Shown one piece after another: positions 12,673 through 53,715 of a stretch of 64,000 nt of DNA (positions are counted from its first letter, which is position 1; each line of letters starts with the position of its first letter). The DNA lies in IMG/VR virus record IMGVR_UViG_3300025770_000870, positions 177,919 to 241,918 of that record, one strand, 5' to 3'. The translations under genes and the position numbers were made by a program. Under the pieces are notes generated by a model that made no database searches, was not told the DNA's origin, and worked only from the letters and a program-made list of their open reading frames with translations.

Positions 12673-13006
12673 TGTATTTTACATATTACCTATTTTATTC
12701 ATTTTTATGAATGTTTATCATATGCTTAAGAATAAGCAATTAGATAAGAGATTTAGAGAAAGAGATATAATTGGTATGTCAAGATTGGATATTATATATT
12801 ATTTTACTAAAATTTCATATTGGATATGGGTACCAATTGGTTTCTTTACTAATCAACCAGAACTATTCTATGTATTATTTGTTTTGGGATTTTTGAAATT
12901 TCCCACTTACCATTTTAATAAAAATATTTTCAGGATCTATAATGATATATACCCAATTTTTTCTATATCCACACTAATTACAATTTTTTTTCATTGGTTG
13001 TTTTGA
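12665..13006 (+). CDS. small multi-pass membrane protein
   Basis: several hydrophobic segments; overlaps the upstream ORF. Confidence 0.6.
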   Translation: MINVFYILPILFIFMNVYHMLKNKQLDKRFRERDIIGMSRLDIIYYFTKISYWIWVPIGFFTNQPELFYVLFVLGFLKFPTYHFNKNIFRIYNDIYPIFSISTLITIFFHWLF

Positions 13007-13839
13007 AATTCGTACCATTTTTCAATATTAATAGATTCTGATACATCAAAGTTTTTAAAATTCTTAATTCTTGGTAATCTACCTTTCCATTTTTTATTTA
13101 AAAATAATAGTTTGTTTTTATCAATTTTACAATTTTTATTCGAAATACTACCCTCATTAAAAAGGTTTATCATTTCATCCATACTTAATGTTTTATGTTT
13201 TTTGTCAAAATTTGGATCCGGATGCGACCATCCAAATTTTACTAACCAATTTAATAAAACTTCTTTACTATATTCTTTGTAATCCTCTGTTGTTCCATTA
13301 CCAGTTCTTTTCGATAGTTTTTTATTACCTTCGAATAAAAGACCAGCATGTGTTATTTCTGGAAATTGTTTATCAGACTCAACCTCACAAATTTTATTCC
13401 ATATTATTCTTTGTTTTATTTCATTAGAAATATGATCTACACCTCTTACTATATTTGTTACGTCATAATCATAATCATCTAATATAGAAGAGAAGTTATA
13501 GGTTGGGAATCCATTATTTCTAAGTATAACCATTTCATAACCACCCATATCTAACACATAACCCTTTTCAGTTTTCGTTCCGATTTTCTCAGCAACTTCT
13601 TTATATCTGTCTAATCTTTCTGATTGTCTAAATGTTATATCACTATCCAAACCAAATTTATTCATTTGATCATAGATATAATCTATCCATTCTGGTTTAT
13701 TTCTTTCTTGATCGGTGTCATCAATACGTAGTATGAAAGTACCATTGTTAGCTTTAGCCATTAAATAGTTTAGCAATGCTGTTCTTAAAGTTCCTAAGTG
13801 GAATTGTCCTGTTGGTGACGGAGCTACTCTTGTTATCAT
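12991..13839 (-). CDS. minimal glutamyl-tRNA synthetase-like protein (no anticodon-binding domain)
   Basis: RVAPSPTG, HLGT (HIGH), LRIDDTD, QSER, RGVDH, KLSKR (KMSKS), LGWS-like FGWS; only 282 aa. Confidence 0.85.
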   Translation of the reverse strand: MITRVAPSPTGQFHLGTLRTALLNYLMAKANNGTFILRIDDTDQERNKPEWIDYIYDQMNKFGLDSDITFRQSERLDRYKEVAEKIGTKTEKGYVLDMGGYEMVILRNNGFPTYNFSSILDDYDYDVTNIVRGVDHISNEIKQRIIWNKICEVESDKQFPEITHAGLLFEGNKKLSKRTGNGTTEDYKEYSKEVLLNWLVKFGWSHPDPNFDKKHKTLSMDEMINLFNEGSISNKNCKIDKNKLLFLNKKWKGRLPRIKNFKNFDVSESINIEKWYEFQNNQ

Positions 13840-13894: not shown

Positions 13895-14416
13895 TTAACT
13901 AAACATTTTCAAATGATCTTCTGTTATTATAATAAATTCATAACCCTTTTTATTACACCAATTTATCATAGTTTCCCATTTATTCTTGTTCTTATATGCC
14001 ATTTTTAAGTCATACTCGAAGTTTTTCAACTTTTTAGTTCCTTTTTCAGGAACACTAAGTTTACCAGCATTAAGAGCGATTACCATATTATATTCCTTTT
14101 TAGGTTTTACTTCAACAACTACTTGTTTTAGTACACCATTTACCCTCATTTCATAATAGAAATCTACATAATACGTATGTTTTTTAACTTTAGCATCTCC
14201 ATTTTCAAAATGTGTCATTTGGTAAGGTATATTTAAACATTCGGCTCCCCACATTGTTACTTGATCATTATTATCTAACCAAAACATTATTTTCTTTTCC
14301 CAAGAACTCCTATAATAAAGTCCACGTTCAGCATTTAACTTTATCACTTTATCTTTATTTTTTGGTATATAATTACCACCATGATATTTAGAATTATTTG
14401 GTTTCGAGTTTAACAT
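13895..14416 (-). CDS. head completion protein (T4 gp4-like, TnsA-type nuclease fold)
   Basis: YRSSWE, HTYYVDF, VEVKP, W...GYEFIIITE. Confidence 0.9.
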   Translation of the reverse strand: MLNSKPNNSKYHGGNYIPKNKDKVIKLNAERGLYYRSSWEKKIMFWLDNNDQVTMWGAECLNIPYQMTHFENGDAKVKKHTYYVDFYYEMRVNGVLKQVVVEVKPKKEYNMVIALNAGKLSVPEKGTKKLKNFEYDLKMAYKNKNKWETMINWCNKKGYEFIIITEDHLKMFS

Positions 14417-15608: not shown

Positions 15609-17306
15609 ATGCCATCATATAATAACTTTAACGGAGCAGCAGGAGCAGATTCTAACTTCGCTGCTAGTAATTCAGCAGTTGAGAATAAAGGACTATTTAG
15701 TCGTATTCTAAGAAACCTTTCAAATTATGGTATGAACTATGATGATATGATCATCAGAAATCAAGTTGGTATCGGTATAAATGAGGATCCATATTCAGCT
15801 AGAGGTAATTCGATGTATGATTTCTTTAGTCAGAGAGCTGTGGCTTCTGTTTTGAATAGAAAGTCAATACCTTATCTAGATAAAGCATATGGTGATAAGA
15901 GAAGAATACTTAGAGAGTATTCTATTAAGGATGAAATAAGAGATTTTGTGAGTACTATATCGGATGAGTCTATTGTTTTTAATGATGATGTTGCCTTTTG
16001 CTCACCTAAATCACTATCAAATGAATATCCACAAGAAGTAAGAGATAAGTATCAAGAATATTTCGAAAAAATATACAATAAGTATGGATTTTCTGATGGT
16101 ATTAGTGCTTGGGATATGATGAGAGATTTCCTTATTGATGGTTATATAGCTATTGAGATTATATATGATGATAAGAAAAAGAATATTGTTGGTTTCAATA
16201 GAATGAGACCAGAAACTTTAGTACCTGCTTATGAACCAGCTATTGGACACTTATGGATACAATTTCCAGAGGATCCACAATTAAGGAGAATATTTTTAGA
16301 TTCACAAATAGTTTATATATCATATTCAACACAGAATGATTATTCAGAAACTTCTTATGTTGAAGGTTTGATAAAACCATATAATCAATTAAAAATATTA
16401 GAACAAACTAGAATAATGTTCAATGTTATAAACGCTACTCTTTATCAAAAATTTACAATTCCTATTAAAGGATTGTCTAGACAAAGAGCAGAAGAACAAA
16501 TAGGTCAGTTAATACATGATTATTCAGAAGAAGTTGAGTGGGATGATAGTCTAGGAACACTTACTATCAATGGTGCTAAGCACTTACCTTACAATAAACA
16601 AATATGGTTTCCTGAGGGAGATGCTGGTACTCCTAATATGGAGATGGTTTCACCAGAAGGTCATGATTTGAATGATGAAACTATGTTATCTTGGTTTTAT
16701 AAGTCTCTTAAAAGAGCTTCTAAGATACCTATATCTAGATTCGAAGGTGAAAATGGTGGTGGTAACCTTTTTGGTGACGCTTCTGAGATGACTAGAGATG
16801 AGATTAAATTTCACAATTTTATTAGTAGATTAAGAGCTAACTTTAAAGAACTTATTGTTAAGCCACTTAAATTACAAATGTTAATTGAGTTTCCTGAATT
16901 AACAGAGGATGAGGTATTTACTAATAGAGTTGATATTGACTTCTATACTAATCAAATATTTGAAGATTGGAAGAAGATAAATAACTTAGCTAAGAAATCA
17001 GAAATAGTTGGAACTTTATTAGGTGTTATGAGAACAGATGAAAAACCTTATTTTCACATTGAGTGGATAATGGATAATATATTCAAGCTTACTCCAGAGG
17101 AGAAAGCTGAGAATGACAGGTATTGGGCTCGTGATGCTGGTGAAGGTGTTGGTTCTGGTGAAGAAGGCGCTGAAGGCGGAGATGATGGAGGCGACTTTGG
17201 TGAATCTGGTGATGTTGGTGGTGTAGATGATGCTGGTGGTGGAGATGATGGTGGAGATGCTGGTGGAGATGCTGGTGGAGATGACGGTGGAGAATTTGAA
17301 TTCTAA
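15609..17306 (+). CDS. portal protein (T4 gp20-like) with Gly/Asp-rich tail
   Basis: FLIDG, SYVEGLIKPYNQLKILE, ITRDE-like MTRDEIKFHNFISRLR; late promoter upstream. Confidence 0.92.
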   Translation: MPSYNNFNGAAGADSNFAASNSAVENKGLFSRILRNLSNYGMNYDDMIIRNQVGIGINEDPYSARGNSMYDFFSQRAVASVLNRKSIPYLDKAYGDKRRILREYSIKDEIRDFVSTISDESIVFNDDVAFCSPKSLSNEYPQEVRDKYQEYFEKIYNKYGFSDGISAWDMMRDFLIDGYIAIEIIYDDKKKNIVGFNRMRPETLVPAYEPAIGHLWIQFPEDPQLRRIFLDSQIVYISYSTQNDYSETSYVEGLIKPYNQLKILEQTRIMFNVINATLYQKFTIPIKGLSRQRAEEQIGQLIHDYSEEVEWDDSLGTLTINGAKHLPYNKQIWFPEGDAGTPNMEMVSPEGHDLNDETMLSWFYKSLKRASKIPISRFEGENGGGNLFGDASEMTRDEIKFHNFISRLRANFKELIVKPLKLQMLIEFPELTEDEVFTNRVDIDFYTNQIFEDWKKINNLAKKSEIVGTLLGVMRTDEKPYFHIEWIMDNIFKLTPEEKAENDRYWARDAGEGVGSGEEGAEGGDDGGDFGESGDVGGVDDAGGGDDGGDAGGDAGGDDGGEFEF

Positions 17307-17323: not shown

Positions 17324-17355
17324 AAACCTCTTAAAATTAATTAAGAGGTTTTTTT
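17324..17355. terminator. bidirectional intrinsic terminator
   Basis: AAACCTCTTAA...TTAAGAGGTTTTTTT between convergent genes. Confidence 0.8.
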
Positions 17356-17809
17356 ATGCCGCAGTTTTTGGGTCGGGTATATCAAAGTAAAATTGTGTTA
17401 CGCTATTACAACTTGGAAGTTTCATTTGTTTAACTTCTAGTAAACACCCCGATTCTAATATGTTTTTTAATTCTTTACCTTTTGGTGTATCTAGAACTTT
17501 TAATACTATTTTTAACTCATCCACTTTATTATTCGTTATGATAAAAGACATTGACCTAACAAAAAATGATATACTTTTTAATAATATATCAGAATATTCT
17601 GGTTTTCCTAAACTACCATATACCGGACTATTTATTTTTGATATTTCGGTTACGTCAAATCCAATCCTTTTACCTTCGTTTAATAAAACATTAAGTTTTA
17701 TCTCACGTTTATATTGTATCCATTGTGGAAATTTAGTTAGTAATCGATCATAGTTATTTAACTCAACATCATTTCCTAAAACAACATTATATTCTAGTAA
17801 ATCATCCAT
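17354..17809 (-). CDS. degenerate prohead-protease (gp21) paralog with REIKLNVLL motif
   Basis: VYGSLGKP and LKVLDTPKGKELKNILESGC align with VYGEFDHP and IKLLSTYWGKEAKALVDDGC of the 20295 protein. Confidence 0.6.
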   Translation of the reverse strand: MDDLLEYNVVLGNDVELNNYDRLLTKFPQWIQYKREIKLNVLLNEGKRIGFDVTEISKINSPVYGSLGKPEYSDILLKSISFFVRSMSFIITNNKVDELKIVLKVLDTPKGKELKNILESGCLLEVKQMKLPSCNSVTQFYFDIPDPKTAA

Positions 17810-19713
17810 TACATTTTTATGAAATCTATTTGTTTCTTTTCTAAATCAACACCATTAACTATGATAGTTATCTCATCACCTAATCTGATTCTATCCCCAA
17901 CATCATTAAAGATTTGATAGTTTTGTGTGTCTATATTATAATTACCTTCTAAAGATTGGTATCTTATCATACCCTCACATTTACTTTCTGTTAATTCAAC
18001 ATATAATCCCCAATCAGTTACACCAGAAACTATCCCAGTGAATACTTTCCCAATTTTATCTAAAAGATATTCGGCTTGTTTGTATTTTATAGAATCTCTT
18101 TGGGCTCTGGATGCTATCAATTCTCTACTTGAACACCATTTAGCCTCATCTTCAACTTTAGTAGGGTTTCCTTGTTTCTTATTATGTAAGAAATCAAGTA
18201 ACATTCTATGTGTCATTAAATCCGGATACCTACGTATTGGACTTGTGAAGTGTGAATAGTGTGTGAATCCTAATCCATAATGTCCTATGTTTTGTATTGT
18301 GTATGTTGCTTTAGACATACATCTAGTTACAACCGTACTTAACATATTTTCTTCTGGTGTTCCTTTAACATCTTGTAATAACTTGTTTATAGATTTTTTA
18401 AGATCTTCAGATTCGCCTTCTATTTTGAATTCGTGACCAAAAGTCTTACACACATTTGATAATGCTGTTAACTTCTCCATATTAGGAGTATCATGTACTC
18501 TAAATACATTAGTTCTCGAATTACTTGATAATAGTTTAGCAACAGATTTATTAGCTAGTAACATAAATTCTTCAATTAATTTATTAGCTTCTTTCTGTTC
18601 TTTGAAATAAACACCAATTGGTTTCTTATTATCCTCTGCTAATTCGAATCGAACTTCCACACCACCCATCTCTAATGAACCGTCTTTAATTCTTTTCTTT
18701 CTTATTTTCTTAGCTAATGTGTTTAGATGATTAATCATCAATGGATAAACACTACCATCACCTGTGTATTTTTCATCATTACCCTCGATTATCTCTTGAG
18801 CATCCTCATAAGCAAATCTCATATCAGAATGTATGACTGTTTTACCGTGCCATTCTTTAACAATTTTACCATCCGAGTCTAGTGTAAATACAACTGAAAA
18901 TGCTAACCTATCTTCATTAGGTTTTAATGAACATATTCCATTACTAAGTCTTTCTGGTAACATAGATACACATCTATCAACTAGATACACAGATGTTGCT
19001 CTTTCATAAGCTTCATCATCTAATTTAGTACCAGGTTTAACATAGTGTCCAACATCAGCAATATGTACTCCTACTTCAAATCTATTATCATTCATTACTT
19101 TAAGTGATAATGCGTCATCAAAATCACGAGCATCTACTGGGTCGATTGTTATTGTTGTTGTATCTCTCATATCTCTACGAGATTTTATTTCCTTTTCGGT
19201 TATTACTTCTGGTGTGAGTTCTGATTCGTTTATAACATCTTGTGGAAAATCAACTGGTAATCCATATTCATACATTATCGAATTCATCTCAGCGTTATTA
19301 TCACCAACATCTCCTAATATCTTAGTTATCTTAGCTTGTGGGGATTTACTATCTACCCACTTTGTGAGTTCGACTATAACCTTTTGGTTATCTTCCGATT
19401 TTAATCCACCCTTGATATAGAAATCAACTGGTATTCTTTTATTATCTGCTATAACAAATGTTGATTTACCATTAATATGTACCTTACCAACGAATTCTTT
19501 CTTATTCCTTGATATTGTGTTAATTACTTTAGCTTCTAATTTCCTATCACCCCTAAATACTTCTACAATTACTTTATCTAAGTGTAAAGCATTTTTAGTA
19601 TTCTTCTTATAAATGAAAATTGATTTATCGTTTATTGTGATTGTTGCGTGTCTGTTTGTTGAGAACTCTATTTGACCTTCGTAACGTTCTCCTTCTTTTA
19701 TATTATTATTCAT
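17809..19713 (-). CDS. rnr: ribonuclease R (RNB family 3'-5' exoribonuclease)
   Basis: TIDPVDARDFDDALS, VHIADV, HFTSPIRRYPD, C-terminal S1 domain; likely start MNNNIKEG at 19713. Confidence 0.95.
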   Translation of the reverse strand: MNNNIKEGERYEGQIEFSTNRHATITINDKSIFIYKKNTKNALHLDKVIVEVFRGDRKLEAKVINTISRNKKEFVGKVHINGKSTFVIADNKRIPVDFYIKGGLKSEDNQKVIVELTKWVDSKSPQAKITKILGDVGDNNAEMNSIMYEYGLPVDFPQDVINESELTPEVITEKEIKSRRDMRDTTTITIDPVDARDFDDALSLKVMNDNRFEVGVHIADVGHYVKPGTKLDDEAYERATSVYLVDRCVSMLPERLSNGICSLKPNEDRLAFSVVFTLDSDGKIVKEWHGKTVIHSDMRFAYEDAQEIIEGNDEKYTGDGSVYPLMINHLNTLAKKIRKKRIKDGSLEMGGVEVRFELAEDNKKPIGVYFKEQKEANKLIEEFMLLANKSVAKLLSSNSRTNVFRVHDTPNMEKLTALSNVCKTFGHEFKIEGESEDLKKSINKLLQDVKGTPEENMLSTVVTRCMSKATYTIQNIGHYGLGFTHYSHFTSPIRRYPDLMTHRMLLDFLHNKKQGNPTKVEDEAKWCSSRELIASRAQRDSIKYKQAEYLLDKIGKVFTGIVSGVTDWGLYVELTESKCEGMIRYQSLEGNYNIDTQNYQIFNDVGDRIRLGDEITIIVNGVDLEKKQIDFIKM

Positions 19714-19723
19714 ATTCCTTTTA

Positions 19724-20137
19724 TTAGGAAATATCGTTTTGTTTATTATCGCGTTTGGATATGTTGTCAACACCGTACTTATCTATAAGTGTTTTTTTCA
19801 TTTTTTTCAATATTTTATTGTTTTGTATTGGATAGTCAACACCGTAATTTTCTCTTAATGATTTTTTCCTTTTTGATTCTGAGCATTTTCTACAAGAGTA
19901 TTCACCCCAGTTATTATCATATTTAATATAGTTCTTGAATATTACATCCTTTTCGATTCCACATTTATCACACTTACACTTTATTTTATAGTGGGATCCT
20001 TTGGATAGTAATTCAACTGGTATTATTAATAATTCACCAATTGTAACATCACTATATCCTAGATTTTCATAGTATGAATAGTTTGCTTCGCTTATTTTAA
20101 CTTTTATCTCTCTAGTTATTATCATAAAAAACCTCAA
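19724..20137 (-). CDS. zinc-ribbon protein with KYGV repeats (homing-endonuclease-like DNA-binding remnant)
   Basis: CKCDKC...CRKC followed by NYGVDYP and KYGVDNI repeats; no nuclease motif seen. Confidence 0.5.
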   Translation of the reverse strand: MRFFMIITREIKVKISEANYSYYENLGYSDVTIGELLIIPVELLSKGSHYKIKCKCDKCGIEKDVIFKNYIKYDNNWGEYSCRKCSESKRKKSLRENYGVDYPIQNNKILKKMKKTLIDKYGVDNISKRDNKQNDIS

Positions 20138-20215: not shown

Positions 20216-20234
20216 TCTGTAAAGAATCCACCTT
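20216..20234 (+). promoter_or_regulatory. 19-bp element upstream of the prohead protease late promoter
   Basis: TCTGTAAAGAATCCACCTT, identical copy at 22439-22457 with the same spacing to ATATATAC. Confidence 0.7.
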
Positions 20235-20294: not shown

Positions 20295-22436
20295 ATGAAA
20301 CCGGTTTTAATAGTAGAAAATTCACAAAACCAACTTATTAGAGAGAGTAACTCTGCTAATAAGGGGTACACATTAGGTGGTACATTCACCGAATTCGGTG
20401 TCAAGAACAGAAATGAACGTATTTATTCGGCTGATAAATTTTTACCAGCATTGAATGAAATGAATGAACGTATAAGTGGCTTAGGTGCTGTTTATGGTGA
20501 ATTCGATCATCCAGACGTTTTTGACACATCACTCTCAAGAGCCTCGCATATTATCACAAAGGCAAGTTATATCCAAGAGAAAAATATCGTAGCGGGAGAG
20601 ATTAAATTACTAAGTACTTACTGGGGTAAGGAAGCAAAAGCACTTGTCGATGACGGGTGTCCTGTATTCGTTTCTTCAAGAGCTGCTGGTATTACTGAAT
20701 CTGATGGTTCAGTTTCCCTTAAAAAATTATTTACTTATGACATTGTTGCTGACCCAGGATTTGCGTCAGCTAAAATGGATGTTAAGGTACTTAATGAGTC
20801 ATTGGGATATAATGACGAAAAATCTAACTTTAGGATATATGAAATGTCCGATGAGTCAAAAATAAATGAGTTATTCAATATGAACAAAAATGAGTTTGTA
20901 ACAAAAAAACAATTGACTGACTACTCTAACTACTTAGTTAACGAATTAGCATCAACTAAGAAGACAGTTAATACAGCCATTACTAAAGGTAATGTAGCTC
21001 CAAAGAAATTGGAACAATTATTAGAGTATTATGAAGAGTTAAACAACTCTAATTCAAAAGTAGCTAAGTATCTTGATTATTTATCAGAAAAGGTACAAAT
21101 AGTAGTTAATGAGAATAAATCATTAAAGAAGACAACTGAGAAATTAGTTAAACATAATGATTATTTAGCAGAAAACTTAGAGAAATCTATTAATTACGCT
21201 GAGTATTTAGGTGAAAACTTAGATAAGAACATTGATTATTCTGAGTATTTAGCTGAGAATTTAGACAAGAACATATCTTATGCTGAGTATTTAGCTGAGA
21301 ATGTTGATAAAAACATTTCATATTCTGAGTATTTAGCTGAGAGTTTAGATAAGAACATTGCTTATTCTGAATATATCGCTGAGAATTTAGACAAAAACAT
21401 CGCTTATTCTGAGTATATCGCTGAGAATTTAGACAAAAACATTGCTTACTCTGAGTATATCGCAGAAAACGTTGATAATAATATCGCTTATTCTGAATAC
21501 TTATCTGAGCATGTTGAAGGTAACATTGCTTACTCTGAGTATATCGCAGAACATTTAGATGATAACATCGCTTATTCTGAGTATGTAGCAGAGAATCTTG
21601 ACAAATCAATTAATTATCAAGGATTGATAGTTGAGAGATTAAACGGAGATAAATTATTTGAATCTGTTGAAGGATCTGAAAGCTTCCCATCTCTAGACGA
21701 TGCTGGTTTTGAAGCTTTTGATGATGAAGAAAACAAAGATGAAGAAAATTGTAATCTTGAAGTATCATTAGATAATAATGATGAAGAAAATGGTGTTGAA
21801 GAATCTGTTGAGAATACAGATGATTACGCAACAGAAGAAAACAAAGATGAAGAAAATAAAGATGAAGAAAACAAAGAAGATAAAACTGAAAGCCATGATA
21901 TGGTAAACGGTGATAGTGATTCTGAATTATCTGAATCTATTGATAAACTAATTGAAGAAGCTAAAAAACGAAAAGTTTCTGAAACAACAGATGTGAATTT
22001 CTTGAAGTTCATGTCTAAATCACAAGTTGACAGCTTTTACGCTTTGTCAAATGACGAACAAGAGTCAGTTAAAGTCCATATAAACGAAAGAGACTACTTT
22101 ACTCAAAAAGATGTTTTGTTATTGATATCTGAAGCACTATCAACTAAGAACGAATCTCTTGAAGAGAGAATAATCAGATTGATGCCTGAAAACACAAAGC
22201 CAATCTGGGAACAATTAAACGACACTTCTAAGAAATCTATCTTGTCACAAGCTAGATTATATCCAGAAGACGTTTTAACTACTGAGGCACAAGTTGAACA
22301 TTTTTGGTCAACTAGAAAGCTAAAGACAAATGAGTCTGTAACAAAGAAACTTGTATCACATGAAAGCCTTATCCAAGAAGATAAACTTTCAGATAATGAT
22401 GTTCAAGCGATAATGGAAAGATTCAAAAATATTTAA
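20295..22436 (+). CDS. prohead protease (gp21-like) fused to a scaffold/core domain
   Basis: KNRNERIY, YGEFDHP, SHII, VSSRAAG, DIVADPG; then 14-aa repeats and an acidic region. Confidence 0.9.
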   Translation: MKPVLIVENSQNQLIRESNSANKGYTLGGTFTEFGVKNRNERIYSADKFLPALNEMNERISGLGAVYGEFDHPDVFDTSLSRASHIITKASYIQEKNIVAGEIKLLSTYWGKEAKALVDDGCPVFVSSRAAGITESDGSVSLKKLFTYDIVADPGFASAKMDVKVLNESLGYNDEKSNFRIYEMSDESKINELFNMNKNEFVTKKQLTDYSNYLVNELASTKKTVNTAITKGNVAPKKLEQLLEYYEELNNSNSKVAKYLDYLSEKVQIVVNENKSLKKTTEKLVKHNDYLAENLEKSINYAEYLGENLDKNIDYSEYLAENLDKNISYAEYLAENVDKNISYSEYLAESLDKNIAYSEYIAENLDKNIAYSEYIAENLDKNIAYSEYIAENVDNNIAYSEYLSEHVEGNIAYSEYIAEHLDDNIAYSEYVAENLDKSINYQGLIVERLNGDKLFESVEGSESFPSLDDAGFEAFDDEENKDEENCNLEVSLDNNDEENGVEESVENTDDYATEENKDEENKDEENKEDKTESHDMVNGDSDSELSESIDKLIEEAKKRKVSETTDVNFLKFMSKSQVDSFYALSNDEQESVKVHINERDYFTQKDVLLLISEALSTKNESLEERIIRLMPENTKPIWEQLNDTSKKSILSQARLYPEDVLTTEAQVEHFWSTRKLKTNESVTKKLVSHESLIQEDKLSDNDVQAIMERFKNI
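21174..21635 (+). repeat. 11 x 42-bp in-frame tandem repeat (NLDKNIAYSEYIAE consensus)
   Basis: units counted in the translation from NLEKSINYAEYLGE to NLDKSINYQGLIVE. Confidence 0.9.
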
Positions 22437-22438
22437 TG

Positions 22439-22457
22439 TCTGTAAAGAATCCACCTT
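22439..22457 (+). promoter_or_regulatory. 19-bp element upstream of the major capsid late promoter
   Basis: identical to 20216-20234. Confidence 0.7.
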
Positions 22458-22521: not shown

Positions 22522-24252
22522 ATGTCACACATTAGAATAGACAAACAAAAAGCTATGAAGAAATGGTCTCCAGTATTAGAGAACATGGGAGTTGCTGGTG
22601 AAGATAGATTGGATTGGATGTCAGAATATGCTGAATTTCACTCAATCAATGAAAACGCTTACGCAAACGCTTCAAACGTATCGGGTATGGGAGCTGTAGT
22701 AGCTGCACAACCTAATTCATTAGCTGGTAACACAATTGGCAATTACGCTGACTCAACTGGTTCAGGTGATGTTGGTCAAAACCTTTTACCGGTAGCGATG
22801 AAAATAGCAGCTCAAACAATCGGTTTAGATTTAGTAGCTGTTAAACCTTCTCCAGGTCCAAAAATTGATTTATTATATATCGACTTTAGATATGATGATG
22901 CTCATTTAGGAGATTCAGACGAAAGACCACAAGTCTTTAAGATTGCACCAAACGCTACATTTTTAACTACTGGTGCTGGTGGTATGACAGCAGTTATCGC
23001 TGGATTAAGAGCTCAATTAGCTACGAATACAATCACTGAAACAGTTGGTGGTTTAACTGGTAGAATGTGGAATGATATCACAGATGGTTCAGATGTAGTT
23101 GTAGAACCAACACCTTCAAAAGAAGGAAAAGTTGAATTTTTAGGATTCTCTAGAATTGATGGTTATCCAATGTTCAGAGCTTACAGACAGATGAATACAT
23201 CTCACACAGATGTTGGTTCAGCTCAAGCAAACTGGGGATTTGACCCGACTAGAAACACATTTAGTCCTACAATGTCAATGGCTTCTCAAATTACTGATTT
23301 AGGAGATGTTACTTTAACTGATGAGCCTACTATTGAATTAGTATCAGCTCTTGAAGATCACATTCCTGGTTTCTCTGCAAACTGGATGTCGGATGCTACT
23401 GGCCCTGCTGGTAACTATCCAATGGATAGAGAAATGGACGATAAAAGATACTCTGGTATCATCGGACCAAAAATTAGTTCTAAAACAGTTGCCGTAGGTA
23501 CTATTGAAGTATCTTCAGCTCTTAGAAGAACTGAAATTGAAGATATCAAAGCTAACACTGGTATGGATATCGTTCAAAAAATGGAGTCAATTCTTGTTAA
23601 TGAATTATCTCAAACAATCTCTAAGCAAATTGTTGCTAAGATATTTGAAATGGGTTCACTTAACAGATTATCTGCACCAGCTTATGTTGGAACAGCACCG
23701 GCACCATTAGCGGGACAAACAATCTTTGACTTAAACACAGCTTATGCAACTGTTGCTGCTGGTAATGGAAACGTTGGTGGTGAAACTACACACGCTGTTC
23801 AAAGAAAGCTTGTAACTAAGATAGCTCACGCTTCTAACTACATCGCTACAGAGGGACGTGTTGGTCCAGCTCAATACCTTATTACAAATGGGGGATTAGC
23901 AGCAGCACTTTCTGATATCTCTGGTTATACAATTAACCCAGTGAAATCAAAAATCAATGGTCAAGGTCAATTATACCCAGTAGGTTCAATTGGAGATATT
24001 TCAATATATGTTGATCCATATATGAGATATAACGACAATAGAATTGCTCTTGGTAGAAAGAACAATCCAGATCAACCAGGTATTATTTTTGTACCTTACT
24101 TAATGGCTCAGTCTATATCTGTAATTTCTGAAGCGACTTTCGCTCCTAGAATGTTACTAAGATCTAGATACGCTGTAACAGAAGTTGGTTGGTTCCCACA
24201 AAAACAATTTATGACTATCGAAGTTACAGATGTGAATACACTTCTTAACTAA
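22522..24252 (+). CDS. major capsid protein (T4 gp23-like)
   Basis: KKWSPVLE start, QTIGLDLVAVKP, IFVPY, TFAPRMLLRSRYAV; lies downstream of protease/scaffold. Confidence 0.92.
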   Translation: MSHIRIDKQKAMKKWSPVLENMGVAGEDRLDWMSEYAEFHSINENAYANASNVSGMGAVVAAQPNSLAGNTIGNYADSTGSGDVGQNLLPVAMKIAAQTIGLDLVAVKPSPGPKIDLLYIDFRYDDAHLGDSDERPQVFKIAPNATFLTTGAGGMTAVIAGLRAQLATNTITETVGGLTGRMWNDITDGSDVVVEPTPSKEGKVEFLGFSRIDGYPMFRAYRQMNTSHTDVGSAQANWGFDPTRNTFSPTMSMASQITDLGDVTLTDEPTIELVSALEDHIPGFSANWMSDATGPAGNYPMDREMDDKRYSGIIGPKISSKTVAVGTIEVSSALRRTEIEDIKANTGMDIVQKMESILVNELSQTISKQIVAKIFEMGSLNRLSAPAYVGTAPAPLAGQTIFDLNTAYATVAAGNGNVGGETTHAVQRKLVTKIAHASNYIATEGRVGPAQYLITNGGLAAALSDISGYTINPVKSKINGQGQLYPVGSIGDISIYVDPYMRYNDNRIALGRKNNPDQPGIIFVPYLMAQSISVISEATFAPRMLLRSRYAVTEVGWFPQKQFMTIEVTDVNTLLN

Positions 24253-27755: not shown

Positions 27756-28727
27756 ATGTCTGTTATTAGCTATTTTGGTGGCAAGTCCTCAAAGGTCTTC
27801 CATCAGTTCATCAACACAAGAATACCAAAAGATGGTATCAAAACTTATGTAGAACCATTCTCAGGTGCAATGGGAACGTATATGGATGACCCAAATCTTA
27901 AATTCGATACAGTTGTTTATAATGATAAGAACCGCCACCAGGTGAACTTATATAAGTGTTGTCAAAATCCAACAGAAATGTTGATACATATAGATAATCT
28001 AAAGAGTGGTTTATTACACACAACAGAAACGGATCCAATAAAAAATTGGGATTTTTATAAAGCTATTTATAAGACATTTCAAAAGAATGATTTCTTAGAT
28101 GATATGGATTTTGAGATTGGGGATTATGAAAAAGCTGCTATGTATGCTTTCTTAATTACATCAGCTCATAATTCAGTTTATCCAAGAGGAGCAGGGTTTA
28201 ATGGTTATAAGAAGAATAATGGCAAACTTAAAATAGAAGCACTTGTTAATAAACTAAAGAAGGGTAAGTACACAGAGAAATTGGAATCAATTACTGAGTT
28301 CTATAATATTGATTTTGAGGAATTGATAAACAAATATGATTCAGTAGATACATTTCTTTACTTAGACCCACCTTACGCTAGATTTGACGAGGCTAAAGGA
28401 ATGGATGATGCTAGGAGACTATTCTGGTATGGATGTGATGATGAAGGTGTCTTTGGACCCGAATCACATAGAAGGTTATTAGAAATGCTTAAAAAGACTG
28501 ATTGTAGATGGTCATTATCTTATTATTACTTTCCTTTATTAGAAGAATTATTACCAAGAGACCAATATAACTGGGTTGAGAAAGAAGTATTTAGAAGTTC
28601 TGCTCATGGTGGTAACAATTCGGATAATAAAAAGGTACAAGCTAAAGGTGTTGAGATGCTTATTATGAATTATAATCCAGAAACGGGAGAAAAAATCACT
28701 AATAAGGATGTCGAATGTGAACTTTAA
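27756..28727 (+). CDS. DNA adenine methyltransferase (Dam/D12 class)
   Basis: YFGGKS, YVEPFSGA, YNDKN, LYLDPPY. Confidence 0.9.
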   Translation: MSVISYFGGKSSKVFHQFINTRIPKDGIKTYVEPFSGAMGTYMDDPNLKFDTVVYNDKNRHQVNLYKCCQNPTEMLIHIDNLKSGLLHTTETDPIKNWDFYKAIYKTFQKNDFLDDMDFEIGDYEKAAMYAFLITSAHNSVYPRGAGFNGYKKNNGKLKIEALVNKLKKGKYTEKLESITEFYNIDFEELINKYDSVDTFLYLDPPYARFDEAKGMDDARRLFWYGCDDEGVFGPESHRRLLEMLKKTDCRWSLSYYYFPLLEELLPRDQYNWVEKEVFRSSAHGGNNSDNKKVQAKGVEMLIMNYNPETGEKITNKDVECEL

Positions 28728-29460
28728 GATTGTTGATATTTTCGAGAGTGTTAAGGATGATATTTTTTCAATTCAACCATATTTATCTATTAATAATAAT
28801 CTAAAAAATTTCACTACTAATACATTTAGTTTATCAATTCCGATGGAATTGGATGGGTTTGGTGTTGATACTGATGCTGAGATGATAAGTCTTATTAGGA
28901 TTGAGATGAATCAAAGTATTTATAAAACAATTTTGAAAGAATTATTCAATACTTCAAAATTTGATTATATAGATATTTCTAAAACTGTTAATACTCACCA
29001 ATCTGTTAATGATATTATTGATTTTTTATCTATTGATTGTATAGATAAAAAATATAAGTATTTAGTTACGAATACTTCTATGGCTAATTCAATAGGTGAT
29101 AGTTCATTATTTAACTTTAAACCAAGTGCATCGGTTGTAGAATCTCAAGGTTTACCATATTTATTTGGGTCTTTGATTAAATATGATGTTTATATAGATC
29201 CTTTTATGAAATTTGATGATAATAGAATTTGCTTATTTGATTCTTGTGAGATTAATATAGAGAATATAAATCAAACTGTTACATCAGCGGCCACATTTGC
29301 ACCTAAGATGATGATAAGTTATGATGTGGCTTTTAAAATAGCAGACTCTAAGGTTATATTTGTTTTAGATGGTAATGAATCAAGTAGTTCTTATAAGCAA
29401 TATAAACAATTACAGCGTGATATAAAAATAAATTCTTTATTAGATGGCTCAACAGATTAA
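28708..29460 (+). CDS. truncated major-capsid paralog with C-terminal RDIKINSLL motif
   Basis: YDVYIDPFMKFDDNRICL and AATFAPKMMI align with ISIYVDPYMRYNDNRIAL and EATFAPRMLL of the 22522 capsid. Confidence 0.75.
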   Translation: MSNVNFKIVDIFESVKDDIFSIQPYLSINNNLKNFTTNTFSLSIPMELDGFGVDTDAEMISLIRIEMNQSIYKTILKELFNTSKFDYIDISKTVNTHQSVNDIIDFLSIDCIDKKYKYLVTNTSMANSIGDSSLFNFKPSASVVESQGLPYLFGSLIKYDVYIDPFMKFDDNRICLFDSCEINIENINQTVTSAATFAPKMMISYDVAFKIADSKVIFVLDGNESSSSYKQYKQLQRDIKINSLLDGSTD

Positions 29461-53238: not shown

Positions 53239-53715
53239 GTGGTTAATAATCTAAGAAATATAATTATTGGTGATACCAATGTAGGAAAATCTACTTATTT
53301 GTATCAAATAGCAAACACATTAAATAAATGTGGGTATTCGGTATGCCTTATTGATGGTGATGGGTCTGGTATATCAAACCCTATTGATAATGATGTTATA
53401 AACCTTGTGAATAAGAATGATGTTAGGTTATTTAAGATGGTAAATAATATTGATGATATTGATGTTATTTTAATTGATGATATTGGATATTTATCTTCTG
53501 AGTGTATATCTGAGGTTTCTGATAGTAAAAAGGTTATTATATCAATTTGTTTCAAGGACTGGGGATCCAAACTGAATAAGTTTGTTGAAAAAAGTGAAAT
53601 ATTTAAATTGACTAAGACAACAATTGAGTATAATAATTCTATTATAGATAGAAATGGATATTTATTACAATCAATAAGAGAAACAAAACTAAAATACTTA
53701 TTAAATGAAAAATAG
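53239..53715 (+). CDS. miniature P-loop NTPase (RecA/DnaB-like) with RETKLKYLL motif
   Basis: GDTNVGKST Walker A, VILIDD Walker B, only 158 aa. Confidence 0.6.
   Translation: MVNNLRNIIIGDTNVGKSTYLYQIANTLNKCGYSVCLIDGDGSGISNPIDNDVINLVNKNDVRLFKMVNNIDDIDVILIDDIGYLSSECISEVSDSKKVIISICFKDWGSKLNKFVEKSEIFKLTKTTIEYNNSIIDRNGYLLQSIRETKLKYLLNEK

What the first reader, a model, noticed from the sequence alone, without database searches (positions are those of the whole stretch)
17354..17809. Catalytically dead prohead-protease paralog
PVYGSLGKPEYSDILLKSISFFVRSMSF...LKVLDTPKGKELKNILESGC aligns almost colinearly with AVYGEFDHPDVFDTSLSRASHIITKASY...IKLLSTYWGKEAKALVDDGC of the real protease. Both conserved His residues (HP and SH) and the SSR serine motif are absent. 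It carries the REIKLNVLL tag and is coupled to RNase R on the opposite strand from the head genes. It could inhibit premature gp21 activity or act as a decoy for protease-sensing defences.
Basis: partly seen in the sequence, partly recalled or inferred. Interest (0 to 1): 0.7.

Follow-up and report, generated by a model that had tools for sequence, protein, structure and literature searches.

The report
Dead copy of phage head protease
A marine giant phage carries a small, fast-evolving gene that has the fold of its capsid-maturation protease but has lost the catalytic residues, and it shares a short peptide tag with several unrelated proteins; similar protease copies are known from other giant phages, and their job is still unknown.

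Summary

It belongs to a large unannotated family (117 clusters at 50% identity) of Mahaphage-like megaphages. The gene sits in an opposite-strand cassette inserted between the portal and protease genes. Its constant upstream partner is a DUF7487 zinc-ribbon, homing-endonuclease-like gene. RNase R is an optional insert, so the RNase R link is not conserved.

The gene is under purifying selection (dN/dS 0.2-0.3) but diverges far faster than its neighbours (34% versus 83-89% identity). The most conserved surface-type element across the family is the KREIKLNxLL helix. The same peptide recurs at the extreme C-terminus of unrelated proteins, including a truncated capsid-protein paralog.

Identity is well supported; function is not. 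An inhibitor or decoy role remains untested, and the complex prediction gave no answer. Diverged protease paralogs were already described in phiKZ-like phages in 2017.

The parts
17354..17809 (-). 151-aa pseudo-protease gene (ORF151) with a gp21-like fold over residues 1-146
17426..17632 (-). Residues 60-128, the stretch with detectable sequence homology to the protease domain
   Evidence: BLASTP E 4e-6; hhalign 97%, E 7e-11.
17603..17605 (-). Lys69 codon, at the position of the catalytic His (His72 of the window protease, His85 of T4 gp21)
   Evidence: hhalign alignment. Column composition in 92 relatives is D16, K14, N12, E11 with no conserved His. T4 numbering mapped.
17429..17431 (-). Lys127 codon, at the position of the catalytic Ser (Ser127 of the window protease, Ser140 of T4 gp21)
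   Evidence: hhalign alignment. The column is K in 42 of 92 and S in 5 of 92. Only 1 of 92 members has both a nearby His and a Ser.
17672..17722 (-). Tag helix, residues 30-46 (W..YKREIKLNVLLNEG), the most conserved element of the family
   Evidence: Arg35 invariant and Leu43 over 90% conserved in 92 sequences. Predicted helix 29-43. A 24-position HMM of this stretch hits the C-terminus of the capsid-protein paralog at E 5e-8.
17809..19713 (-). RNase R / RNase II family gene (634 aa from the conserved ATG); its stop overlaps the ORF151 start
   Evidence: Pfam RNB 1e-110, CSD2, S1. Start inferred from relatives. Absent between the two genes in LR756502 and L010.
19724..20125 (-). DUF7487 zinc-ribbon, homing-endonuclease-like gene (133 aa); first gene of the minus-strand cassette and constant upstream partner of the family
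   Evidence: Pfam PF24308 6e-7. PHROG 12131 'homing endonuclease', N-terminal 127 of 313 positions only. Found upstream in the window, L001, L002, L010, L013-L015 and both P0203 contigs. dN/dS 0.00-0.09.
17324..17351 (.). Hairpin followed by a T run, between the convergent portal gene and ORF151; a likely terminator for the cassette
   Evidence: Terminator-like site on the minus strand, 11-pair stem; sequence read.
20295..22436 (+). The real prohead protease, fused to a scaffold-like domain (713 aa) with His72, Ser127 and Asp149 and about 9.5 copies of a 14-aa repeat
   Evidence: PHROG 207 head maturation protease 1.6e-30. Pfam Peptidase_S77 E 0.0012, below the cut-off. Tandem repeat at 21199-21596, period 42.
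15609..17306 (+). T4-type portal gene, the left flank of the cassette
   Evidence: Pfam Portal_T4 2e-56.
29416..29442 (+). Same tag (RDIKINSLL) five residues from the C-terminus of a 250-aa truncated capsid-protein paralog (28708..29460)
   Evidence: Motif scan. HMM hit E 5e-8. BLASTP to the major capsid protein E 3e-15. Tag kept in orthologs that are 56% and 30% identical overall.
53677..53703 (+). Same tag (RETKLKYLL) three residues from the C-terminus of a 158-aa P-loop NTPase (53239..53715)
   Evidence: The LR745206 ortholog, 49% identical overall, ends with KRELKLNTLLDEE.

Best explanation
ORF151 is a non-catalytic descendant of the T4-type (Peptidase S77, gp21) prohead protease domain. 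It keeps the whole protease fold but has lost the His and Ser of the active site, so it can bind but not cleave. SHOWN: the fold, the homology, the loss of catalytic residues, and purifying selection. Also shown are membership of a large megaphage-specific family and the gene's position as the last gene of an opposite-strand cassette. That cassette (DUF7487 homing-endonuclease-like gene, optional RNase R, then this gene) is inserted between the portal and protease-scaffold genes of some lineages only. INFERRED: the body of the protein evolves very fast, while the conserved positions are a few core residues and one element, the KREIKLNxLL helix. The same peptide sits at the extreme C-terminus of several unrelated proteins of this phage, including a truncated capsid-protein paralog. 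I therefore think the helix is an address tag that docks these proteins onto one common partner, and that the dead protease body is a variable binding module rather than a one-to-one regulator of the nearly invariant protease. My most likely specific reading (about 0.3) is that the partner lies in the assembling head, in the scaffold or protease core. ORF151 would then be a tagged internal or accessory head protein, working like the capsid-targeting-sequence proteins of T4. Identity as a pseudo-protease: about 0.9 or more. The confidence below is for the whole statement.
Against: No binding partner was identified. The complex prediction with the protease domain gave no answer. The cassette lacks the T[AT]ATATATA promoter-like motif that precedes the portal and capsid genes and a variant of which precedes the protease gene, so co-expression with head genes is not indicated. 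The tag carriers are heterogeneous (P-loop NTPase, zinc-ribbon protein, a protein with an N-terminal hydrophobic segment), which fits a general hub as well as a capsid address. In ORF151 the tag is internal and is predicted to be part of the fold, not a free tail. The gene is missing from some relatives, so it is dispensable. RNA evidence is too thin to show expression.
Confidence: 0.5

Rival explanations
1. Protease regulator or inhibitor. The dead copy co-assembles with the active protease domain, which in T4 forms pentamers, or occupies its substrates. This would delay cleavage until the prohead is complete.
For: Same fold as the protease and a gene next to the protease gene. Dead paralogs regulating active enzymes are a known theme (PMC5201418, listed). 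The former active-site positions Lys127 and Gln128 are moderately conserved, in 42 and 56 of 92 members.
Against: The protease domain is 86-100% identical among the best 120 of 1617 relatives, yet ORF151 falls to 34% identity. A dedicated partner of an invariant protein should keep a conserved interface. The complex prediction was under the mark and counts as no evidence. The gene is absent from LR756501 and LR756504, which have the same protease. It has a different strand and promoter context from the head genes.
Confidence: 0.15
2. Conflict protein unrelated to head assembly. The protease fold has been recycled as a rapidly evolving binder of a host or rival-phage factor. This includes the reader's decoy for protease-sensing defences and a cargo gene of the homing-endonuclease-like cassette used in phage-phage competition.
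For: Hypervariability with retained purifying selection, and allele-like jumps from 73% to 34% identity. dS of this gene against L013 is 0.18, where the protease has 0.005, which suggests recombination of alleles. Constant linkage to a DUF7487 homing-endonuclease-like gene in a presence/absence cassette.
Against: I know of no defence system that senses a gp21-type protease; this rests on my own knowledge and I made no literature search aimed at this question. A decoy should mimic the conserved surface of the protease, but the surface is what varies. This reading does not explain the conserved tag.
Confidence: 0.2
3. Functionless leftover: a decaying partial duplicate of the protease gene created when the endonuclease cassette invaded the portal-protease junction.
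For: Location at a homing-endonuclease insertion site next to the parent gene, and higher dN/dS than the neighbours.
Against: Intact ORFs of 135-170 aa in 117 clusters at 50% identity. dN/dS 0.2-0.3, well below 1. A confident complete fold. It is closer to a foreign protease than to the neighbour. It has a conserved tag.
Confidence: 0.04
4. Chance similarity, or a generic beta-barrel such as a tail-tube or Hcp-like fold, rather than protease ancestry.
For: Pfam finds no family for the protein. A sequence search of the PDB finds nothing. The single T4 gp21 sequence is not detected by the family profile.
Confidence: 0.01

Closest known systems
T4 gp21 prohead (capsid assembly) protease, MEROPS/Pfam Peptidase S77 (formerly U9), PDB 5JBL
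   Different: No catalytic His or Ser. No C-terminal scaffold or targeting extension. Only 151 aa. Encoded on the opposite strand in a separate cassette. Evolves many times faster. Not a peptidase by sequence.
Diverged prohead-protease paralogs of phiKZ-like giant phages: SPN3US gp117, 201phi2-1 gp206 (145 aa), PhiPA3 gp143 (136 aa) (Ali et al. 2017, PMC5694885)
   Same: A small (about 136-150 aa) second copy of the head protease domain in a giant phage, lacking the C-terminal targeting region, with unknown function. BFVD structure hits of the model include small uncharacterised proteins of jumbo phages.
   Different: gp117 keeps the aligned Ser and Asp, whereas the megaphage family has lost both His and Ser. 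It is a different phage lineage with a T4-like portal and capsid (Mahaphage relatives). The duplication may well be independent, but this was not tested with a tree. The tag and the DUF7487 cassette are not reported for gp117.
T4 internal proteins IPI, IPII, IPIII with the capsid targeting sequence
   Same: Works-like comparison only: one short conserved address peptide on otherwise highly diverse proteins (PMC3012670).
   Different: The T4 sequence is an N-terminal peptide of about 10 residues removed by gp21. Here the tag is C-terminal in most carriers and internal in ORF151. Packaging has not been shown and there is no sequence similarity.
T4 Inh (minor head protein annotated as inhibitor of the gp21 protease)
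   Different: No similarity: hhalign probability 0.2%.
Short protein P0236 (157 aa) with a downstream 88-aa scaffold-repeat ORF, from other metagenomic megaphage contigs
   Same: A sister form of dead protease copy (E 5e-10 to ORF151, E 9e-14 to the window protease). Its catalytic His is replaced by Ser and the SSR motif is lost.
   Different: It keeps more protease-like sequence and lies beside a DNA polymerase gene. It is followed by a miniature copy of the scaffold repeats. It has no N-terminal tag helix.

Membership tests
Peptidase S77 (T4 gp21 prohead protease) | gp21 / assemblin-like fold | tested here: met
Peptidase S77 (T4 gp21 prohead protease) | Significant match to the family's sequence profile | tested here: inconclusive
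   Pfam PF03420 gives no hit for ORF151 or for any of 92 relatives. An in-session profile-profile comparison with gp21-type proteases gives 97%, E 7e-11. The family profile also hits a Pfam-verified S77 protein at E 3e-4.
Peptidase S77 (T4 gp21 prohead protease) | Catalytic His and Ser (T4 His85 and Ser140), plus the Asp of the triad | tested here: not met
   Lys69 and Lys127 stand at the His and Ser positions, and no His or Ser is conserved in the family. The Asp aligned with Asp149 of the protease is kept here (Asp143) but only in 31 of 92 members. That this Asp is the triad residue is my alignment-based inference.
Peptidase S77 (T4 gp21 prohead protease) | C-terminal extension that targets the enzyme to the scaffold core and is auto-processed | tested here: not met
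   The protein ends at residue 151, right after the fold. The real protease carries a 540-aa scaffold-like extension.
Giant-phage diverged protease paralogs (SPN3US gp117 type) | Second, short, diverged copy of the prohead protease domain encoded apart from the functional protease | tested here: met
   for this gene. The description of the gp117 group is in PMC5694885.
Giant-phage diverged protease paralogs (SPN3US gp117 type) | Direct sequence relationship (common origin) with gp117, gp206 or gp143 | not tested
   Only structural neighbours among small jumbo-phage proteins were seen. No alignment with gp117 itself was made.
T4-type capsid-targeted internal proteins | Targeting peptide that brings the protein into the prohead core, with the protein found in proheads or virions | not testable with these tools
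   Only the shared-tag pattern is available. No proteomics exist for this uncultured phage.

The most novel reading that the evidence does not exclude
The KREIKLNxLL peptide is a portable address tag of marine megaphages. It would be placed at the extreme C-terminus of unrelated proteins, and once inside a dead protease. It would load a set of fast-evolving cargo into the prohead for delivery into the host. That cargo would include inactivated copies of the head protease and of the capsid protein. This would be a C-terminal counterpart of the T4 capsid targeting sequence or of encapsulin cargo-loading peptides.
Probability: 0.15. Interest if true: 0.8.

Novelty: new variant of a known kind. 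Interest (0 to 1): 0.55.

Why it matters
Pseudo-enzymes derived from a virus's own assembly protease are barely studied. The only earlier report, SPN3US gp117 and relatives, left the function open. This family is large, fully inactivated, hypervariable and linked to a mobile-looking cassette. That makes it a good system for asking what a dead capsid protease is kept for. The shared peptide tag gives a concrete handle. Finding its partner would show whether the largest known phages have a general protein-addressing system, which could also be used to load foreign proteins. If the protein does modulate the protease, it would add a control step to capsid maturation.

Tried and rejected
- Pfam on ORF151 and on all 92 relatives found no family.
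- PHROGs gave only a 0.38 E-value hint to the head maturation protease.
- A sequence search of the PDB with the family profile found nothing. The real protease domain also fails to find 5JBL by sequence.
- T4 gp67 and gp68, which lie between the portal and protease genes in T4, were inspected by eye and are not similar.
- T4 Inh is not similar.
- The single T4 gp21 sequence is not detected by the family profile.
- The ESM Atlas feature search gave no usable lead.
- Complex prediction of the protease domain with ORF151 scored 0.28, under the 0.32 mark, and is declared no evidence.
- I tested whether the tag is really a DNA element, such as a promoter embedded in gene ends. This is rejected because the instances use different synonymous codons and the two best instances share only 39 of 63 bases.
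- I tested whether the N-terminal tag module exists as a stand-alone mini-protein. The short database entries look like truncated or frameshifted fragments.
- Metatranscriptome contigs are too sparse to show transcription. One contig from a 90-95% relative bridges the RNase R end and the ORF151 start.
- Two relatives' proteins taken from annotated phage records could not be sent to the remote search and folding tools. They were left out of those jobs.

Full report
WHAT IS THERE. Window 17354..17809 (minus strand) is an intact 151-aa ORF with an ATG start and a TAA stop. It is the last gene of a three-gene minus-strand unit. The first gene is a 133-aa DUF7487 zinc-ribbon protein that matches only the N-terminal part of phage homing-endonuclease families (19724..20125). 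The second is an RNase R / RNB-family gene (17809..19713; Pfam RNB 1e-110). The third is ORF151, whose ATG overlaps the RNase R stop as TAATG. The unit is wedged between a T4-type portal gene (15609..17306, plus strand) and a 713-aa protein (20295..22436, plus strand). That protein has a gp21-type protease domain at its N-terminus, followed by a scaffold-like region with about 9.5 copies of a 14-residue repeat. A hairpin with a T run lies between the convergent portal gene and ORF151.

The window is AT-rich (30% G+C). It is 84% and 79% identical in DNA to two of the largest phage genomes known, LR745206 (635 kb) and LR756502 (642 kb). The record lengths returned (634,780, 636,363, 642,428 and 735,411 bp) match the four largest genomes of Al-Shayeb et al. 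2020, which are placed in the Mahaphage clade and predicted to replicate in Bacteroidetes (PMC7162821). Sequencing runs that hold the stretch are marine and seawater metagenomes.

IS THE SIMILARITY REAL. Yes, on four independent lines.
- BLASTP of ORF151 against the neighbouring protease gives 33% identity over 61 residues, E 4e-6.
- tblastn against 50,697 phage records finds weak hits to gp21 proteases of another megaphage (E 6e-3) and of cyanophages, besides orthologs in the two related megaphages.
- A profile of close relatives searched against 1.8 billion representative proteins finds 117 clusters. Nearly all are 135-170 aa. One full protease, P0240, scores E 3e-4. P0240 has GELDHP and SSRAAG motifs and a precomputed Peptidase_S77 hit.
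- A 92-sequence family alignment compared with an alignment of eight gp21-type proteases gives 97% probability, E 7e-11, for columns 60-128 against 63-128. The reciprocal search of all ORFs of the 242-kb contig picks the protease ORF (E 5e-6).

CATALYTIC RESIDUES. In an alignment with T4 gp21, the window's real protease has His72 and Ser127 at the positions of T4 His85 and Ser140. ORF151 has Lys69 and Lys127 there, and Phe82 in place of the second conserved His. Across 92 relatives the His position is unconserved (D, K, N, E). The Ser position is K in 42 members and S in only 5. Just one member has both a nearby His and a Ser. The invariant or nearly invariant positions are Arg35, Leu43, Gly111 and Phe140, so no alternative nucleophile is conserved. 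The Asp aligned with Asp149 of the protease is kept in this copy (Asp143) but only in 31 of 92 members. Treating that Asp as the third triad residue is my alignment-based inference. The His-Ser-Asp triad of gp21 is stated in PMC5694885. By sequence, the protein is a pseudo-enzyme.

FAMILY, CONTEXT, EVOLUTION. The gene has the same position and orientation in LR745206, LR756502, three long metagenomic contigs (L013-L015) and contig L010. The two P0203 contigs show the same gene arrangement, but their flanking genes were not identified. Wherever the upstream gene is visible it belongs to the same cassette. The DUF7487 gene is seen in every context that reaches far enough upstream. The RNase R gene lies between the two in the window, LR745206 and L013-L015, and it is also the gene directly upstream in the short contig L009. 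It is missing in LR756502, L010 and the P0203 contigs. The 735-kb genome has portal and protease adjacent with nothing between them. LR756504 has a 612-aa endonuclease-type ORF there and no ORF151 homolog. The unit therefore behaves as an optional insertion.

Pairwise dN/dS of ORF151 against close alleles is 0.21-0.30, which is purifying selection. The portal, RNase R, DUF7487 and protease genes give 0.00-0.16. Amino-acid identity to LR745206 is 34%, where the four neighbours are 83-89% identical. dN is 4-17 times that of the neighbours. dS against L013 is 0.18, where the protease gene has 0.005, which points to exchange of divergent alleles. By contrast, the protease domain is 86-100% identical in the best 120 of 1617 relatives. 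ORF151 is more similar to the foreign protease P0240 (41%, E 2e-11) than to its own neighbour (33%, E 2e-6). It is therefore not a recent local duplicate.

A sister form, P0236 (157 aa), keeps more protease-like sequence but has also lost the catalytic His and the SSR motif. It lies beside a DNA polymerase gene and is followed by an 88-aa ORF made of the scaffold repeats. This echoes the gp117-gp118 pair noted in SPN3US.

THE TAG. The stretch W..YKREIKLNVLLNEG (residues 30-46) is the best conserved part of the family and is predicted to be a helix.
- A 24-position HMM of this stretch, built only from ORF151 relatives, hits the last 22 residues of a 250-aa protein at 28708..29460 with E 5e-8 among 1689 ORFs. 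That protein is a truncated, diverged paralog of the major capsid protein (BLASTP E 3e-15). Its orthologs, only 56% and 30% identical overall, keep the tag at their C-termini.
- A pattern written after seeing these cases occurs 7 times in the six-frame ORFs of the 242-kb contig, against 0.27 expected from shuffles. Five of the six hits other than ORF151 end 2-7 residues before a stop codon. That positional property was not part of the pattern.
- The carriers are unrelated to each other: the capsid paralog, a P-loop NTPase (53239..53715), a 66-aa zinc-ribbon protein, a 170-aa protein with an N-terminal hydrophobic segment, and a 78-aa protein.
- The LR745206 ortholog of the NTPase (49% identical) ends with an even better copy of the tag.
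- The instances use different synonymous codons, so the constraint acts on the peptide and not on the DNA.

What the tag binds is unknown.

EXPRESSION SIGNALS. The motif T[AT]ATATATA occurs 34 times in the window. Twenty-four of these lie 13-43 nt upstream of a gene start in the right orientation, including the portal and capsid genes; the protease gene has a one-base variant. There is no copy upstream of the DUF7487 gene or inside the cassette. The cassette therefore probably uses another promoter class, which is an inference. Two metatranscriptome assemblies hold only scattered contigs. One, from a 90-95% relative, bridges the RNase R end and the ORF151 start. DNA carry-over cannot be excluded.

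HOW IT MOST LIKELY WORKS.
- Shown: a complete gp21-like fold without the catalytic His and Ser; selection for an intact protein; very fast divergence of the body; conservation across the family confined to a few core residues plus the tag; and sharing of that tag with unrelated proteins.
- Inferred: the protein acts by binding. The tag docks it, and the other carriers, onto one common partner. The variable body is a binding module rather than a dedicated partner of the nearly invariant protease.
- My preferred specific reading (about 0.3): the partner is in the assembling head. Two carriers are dead copies of head proteins and sit in the head-gene region. T4 also offers a working precedent, with one conserved targeting sequence on highly diverse internal proteins (PMC3012670).
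- Against this reading: the cassette's different promoter context, the heterogeneity of the carriers, and the internal, folded position of the tag in ORF151.
- The inhibitor reading (0.15) is weakened by the mismatch in evolutionary rates and by the gene's absence from relatives with the same protease. The complex prediction (0.28 against a mark of 0.32) counts neither for nor against it.
- A conflict or decoy role (0.2) fits the hypervariability and the mobile-looking cassette. It does not explain the tag, and a decoy should conserve the protease's surface.
- A functionless remnant (0.04) and chance similarity (0.01) are contradicted by the selection, family and structure data.

COMPARISON WITH WHAT IS KNOWN. 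The protein is a homolog of Peptidase S77 but not a member in the enzymatic sense, because the triad test fails. The closest described phenomenon is the diverged prohead-protease paralog of SPN3US (gp117) and its counterparts 201phi2-1 gp206 and PhiPA3 gp143. Ali et al. 2017 reported these and called such a paralog unprecedented in the literature to their knowledge (PMC5694885). Those copies keep the aligned Ser and Asp, and their function is unknown. This family differs in several ways: full loss of His and Ser, a different phage lineage, hypervariability, the DUF7487 cassette and the shared tag. T4 gp67, gp68 and Inh are unrelated.

NOVELTY AND VERDICT. This is a new variant of a known kind. 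The idea of a second, diverged head-protease copy in giant phages is published. This inactivated, tagged, cassette-borne megaphage family is, as far as my searches show, unannotated; sources call it a hypothetical protein. Interest is moderate (0.55). The recurrent C-terminal tag is the most promising lead and deserves a study of its own.

Noticed in passing
window 28708..29460 (+): A 250-aa truncated, diverged paralog of the major capsid protein (BLASTP E 3e-15 to residues 439-546 of the capsid protein at 22522..24252). It carries the same tag at its C-terminus. It also evolves fast, with 56% and 30% identity to the LR745206 and LR756502 orthologs.
   Followed up: partly
window 53239..53715 (+); contig G000:C1 59671-59868 (+), 78763-79272 (-), 133239-133472 (-): A recurrent C-terminal peptide, roughly R-[DE]-x-K-[IL]-[ND]-x-[IL]-L, lies 2-7 residues before the stop codon of unrelated small proteins. 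These are a P-loop NTPase, a zinc-ribbon protein, a protein with an N-terminal hydrophobic segment and a 78-aa protein. There are 7 hits against 0.27 expected. The partner and function are unknown.
   Followed up: partly
window 20216..20234 and 22439..22457 (+): An identical 19-nt element (TCTGTAAAGAATCCACCTT) lies about 25-30 nt upstream of the promoter-like ATATATA motif of both the protease-scaffold gene and the capsid gene. There are 2 exact copies against 0.05 expected. It may be a shared regulatory site for these two head genes.
   Followed up: no
whole window, e.g. 15573, 22482, 24314, 24721, 31748, 43610: The motif T[AT]ATATATA occurs 34 times. Twenty-four copies lie 13-43 nt upstream of gene starts in the right orientation. 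It looks like the phage's own promoter motif, comparable in style to the T4 late promoter TATAAATA.
   Followed up: partly
window 21199..21596 (+), inside the protease-scaffold gene: About 9.5 tandem copies of a 42-nt (14-aa) unit (consensus near NIAYSEYIAENLDK) form the scaffold-like part of the protease fusion. The repeat number and gene length vary between relatives (685-722 aa).
   Followed up: no
window 17809..19713 (-): A full-length RNase R / RNase II family exoribonuclease (CSD, RNB and S1 domains) is encoded by the phage. It is under strong purifying selection (dN/dS 0.07-0.10) and is present in only some relatives.
   Followed up: partly
window 17130..17306 (+), end of the portal gene: The portal protein ends in a long Gly/Asp/Glu-rich low-complexity tail. 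Its length and composition vary between relatives, but it always finishes with EFEF (NFDF in LR756504).
   Followed up: no
L007 736-1462 and L008 655-1369 (metagenomic contigs of another megaphage lineage): A 157-aa dead protease copy (P0236) overlaps a downstream 88-aa ORF made of scaffold-type repeats, directly after a DNA polymerase gene. This appears to be a split miniature duplicate of the protease-scaffold gene, reminiscent of SPN3US gp117-gp118.
   Followed up: partly
window 13895..14416 (-) and 12991..13839 (-): Relatives' precomputed Pfam hits mark these as a Tn7 TnsA-like endonuclease N-terminal domain protein and a class I glutamyl/glutaminyl-tRNA-synthetase-like protein, just upstream of the head genes. 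GIY-YIG endonuclease genes are inserted nearby in two relatives (L014, L015), so this region is a hot spot for mobile nucleases.
   Followed up: no
contig G000:C1 137058-137447 (-): A 130-aa ORF has an internal copy of the tag followed by the same beta-strand context as ORF151 (KIDNILSDEEVIDFDID). The full-family HMM scores it at E 0.0015. It may be a second, very distant relative of the N-terminal part of ORF151.
   Followed up: no
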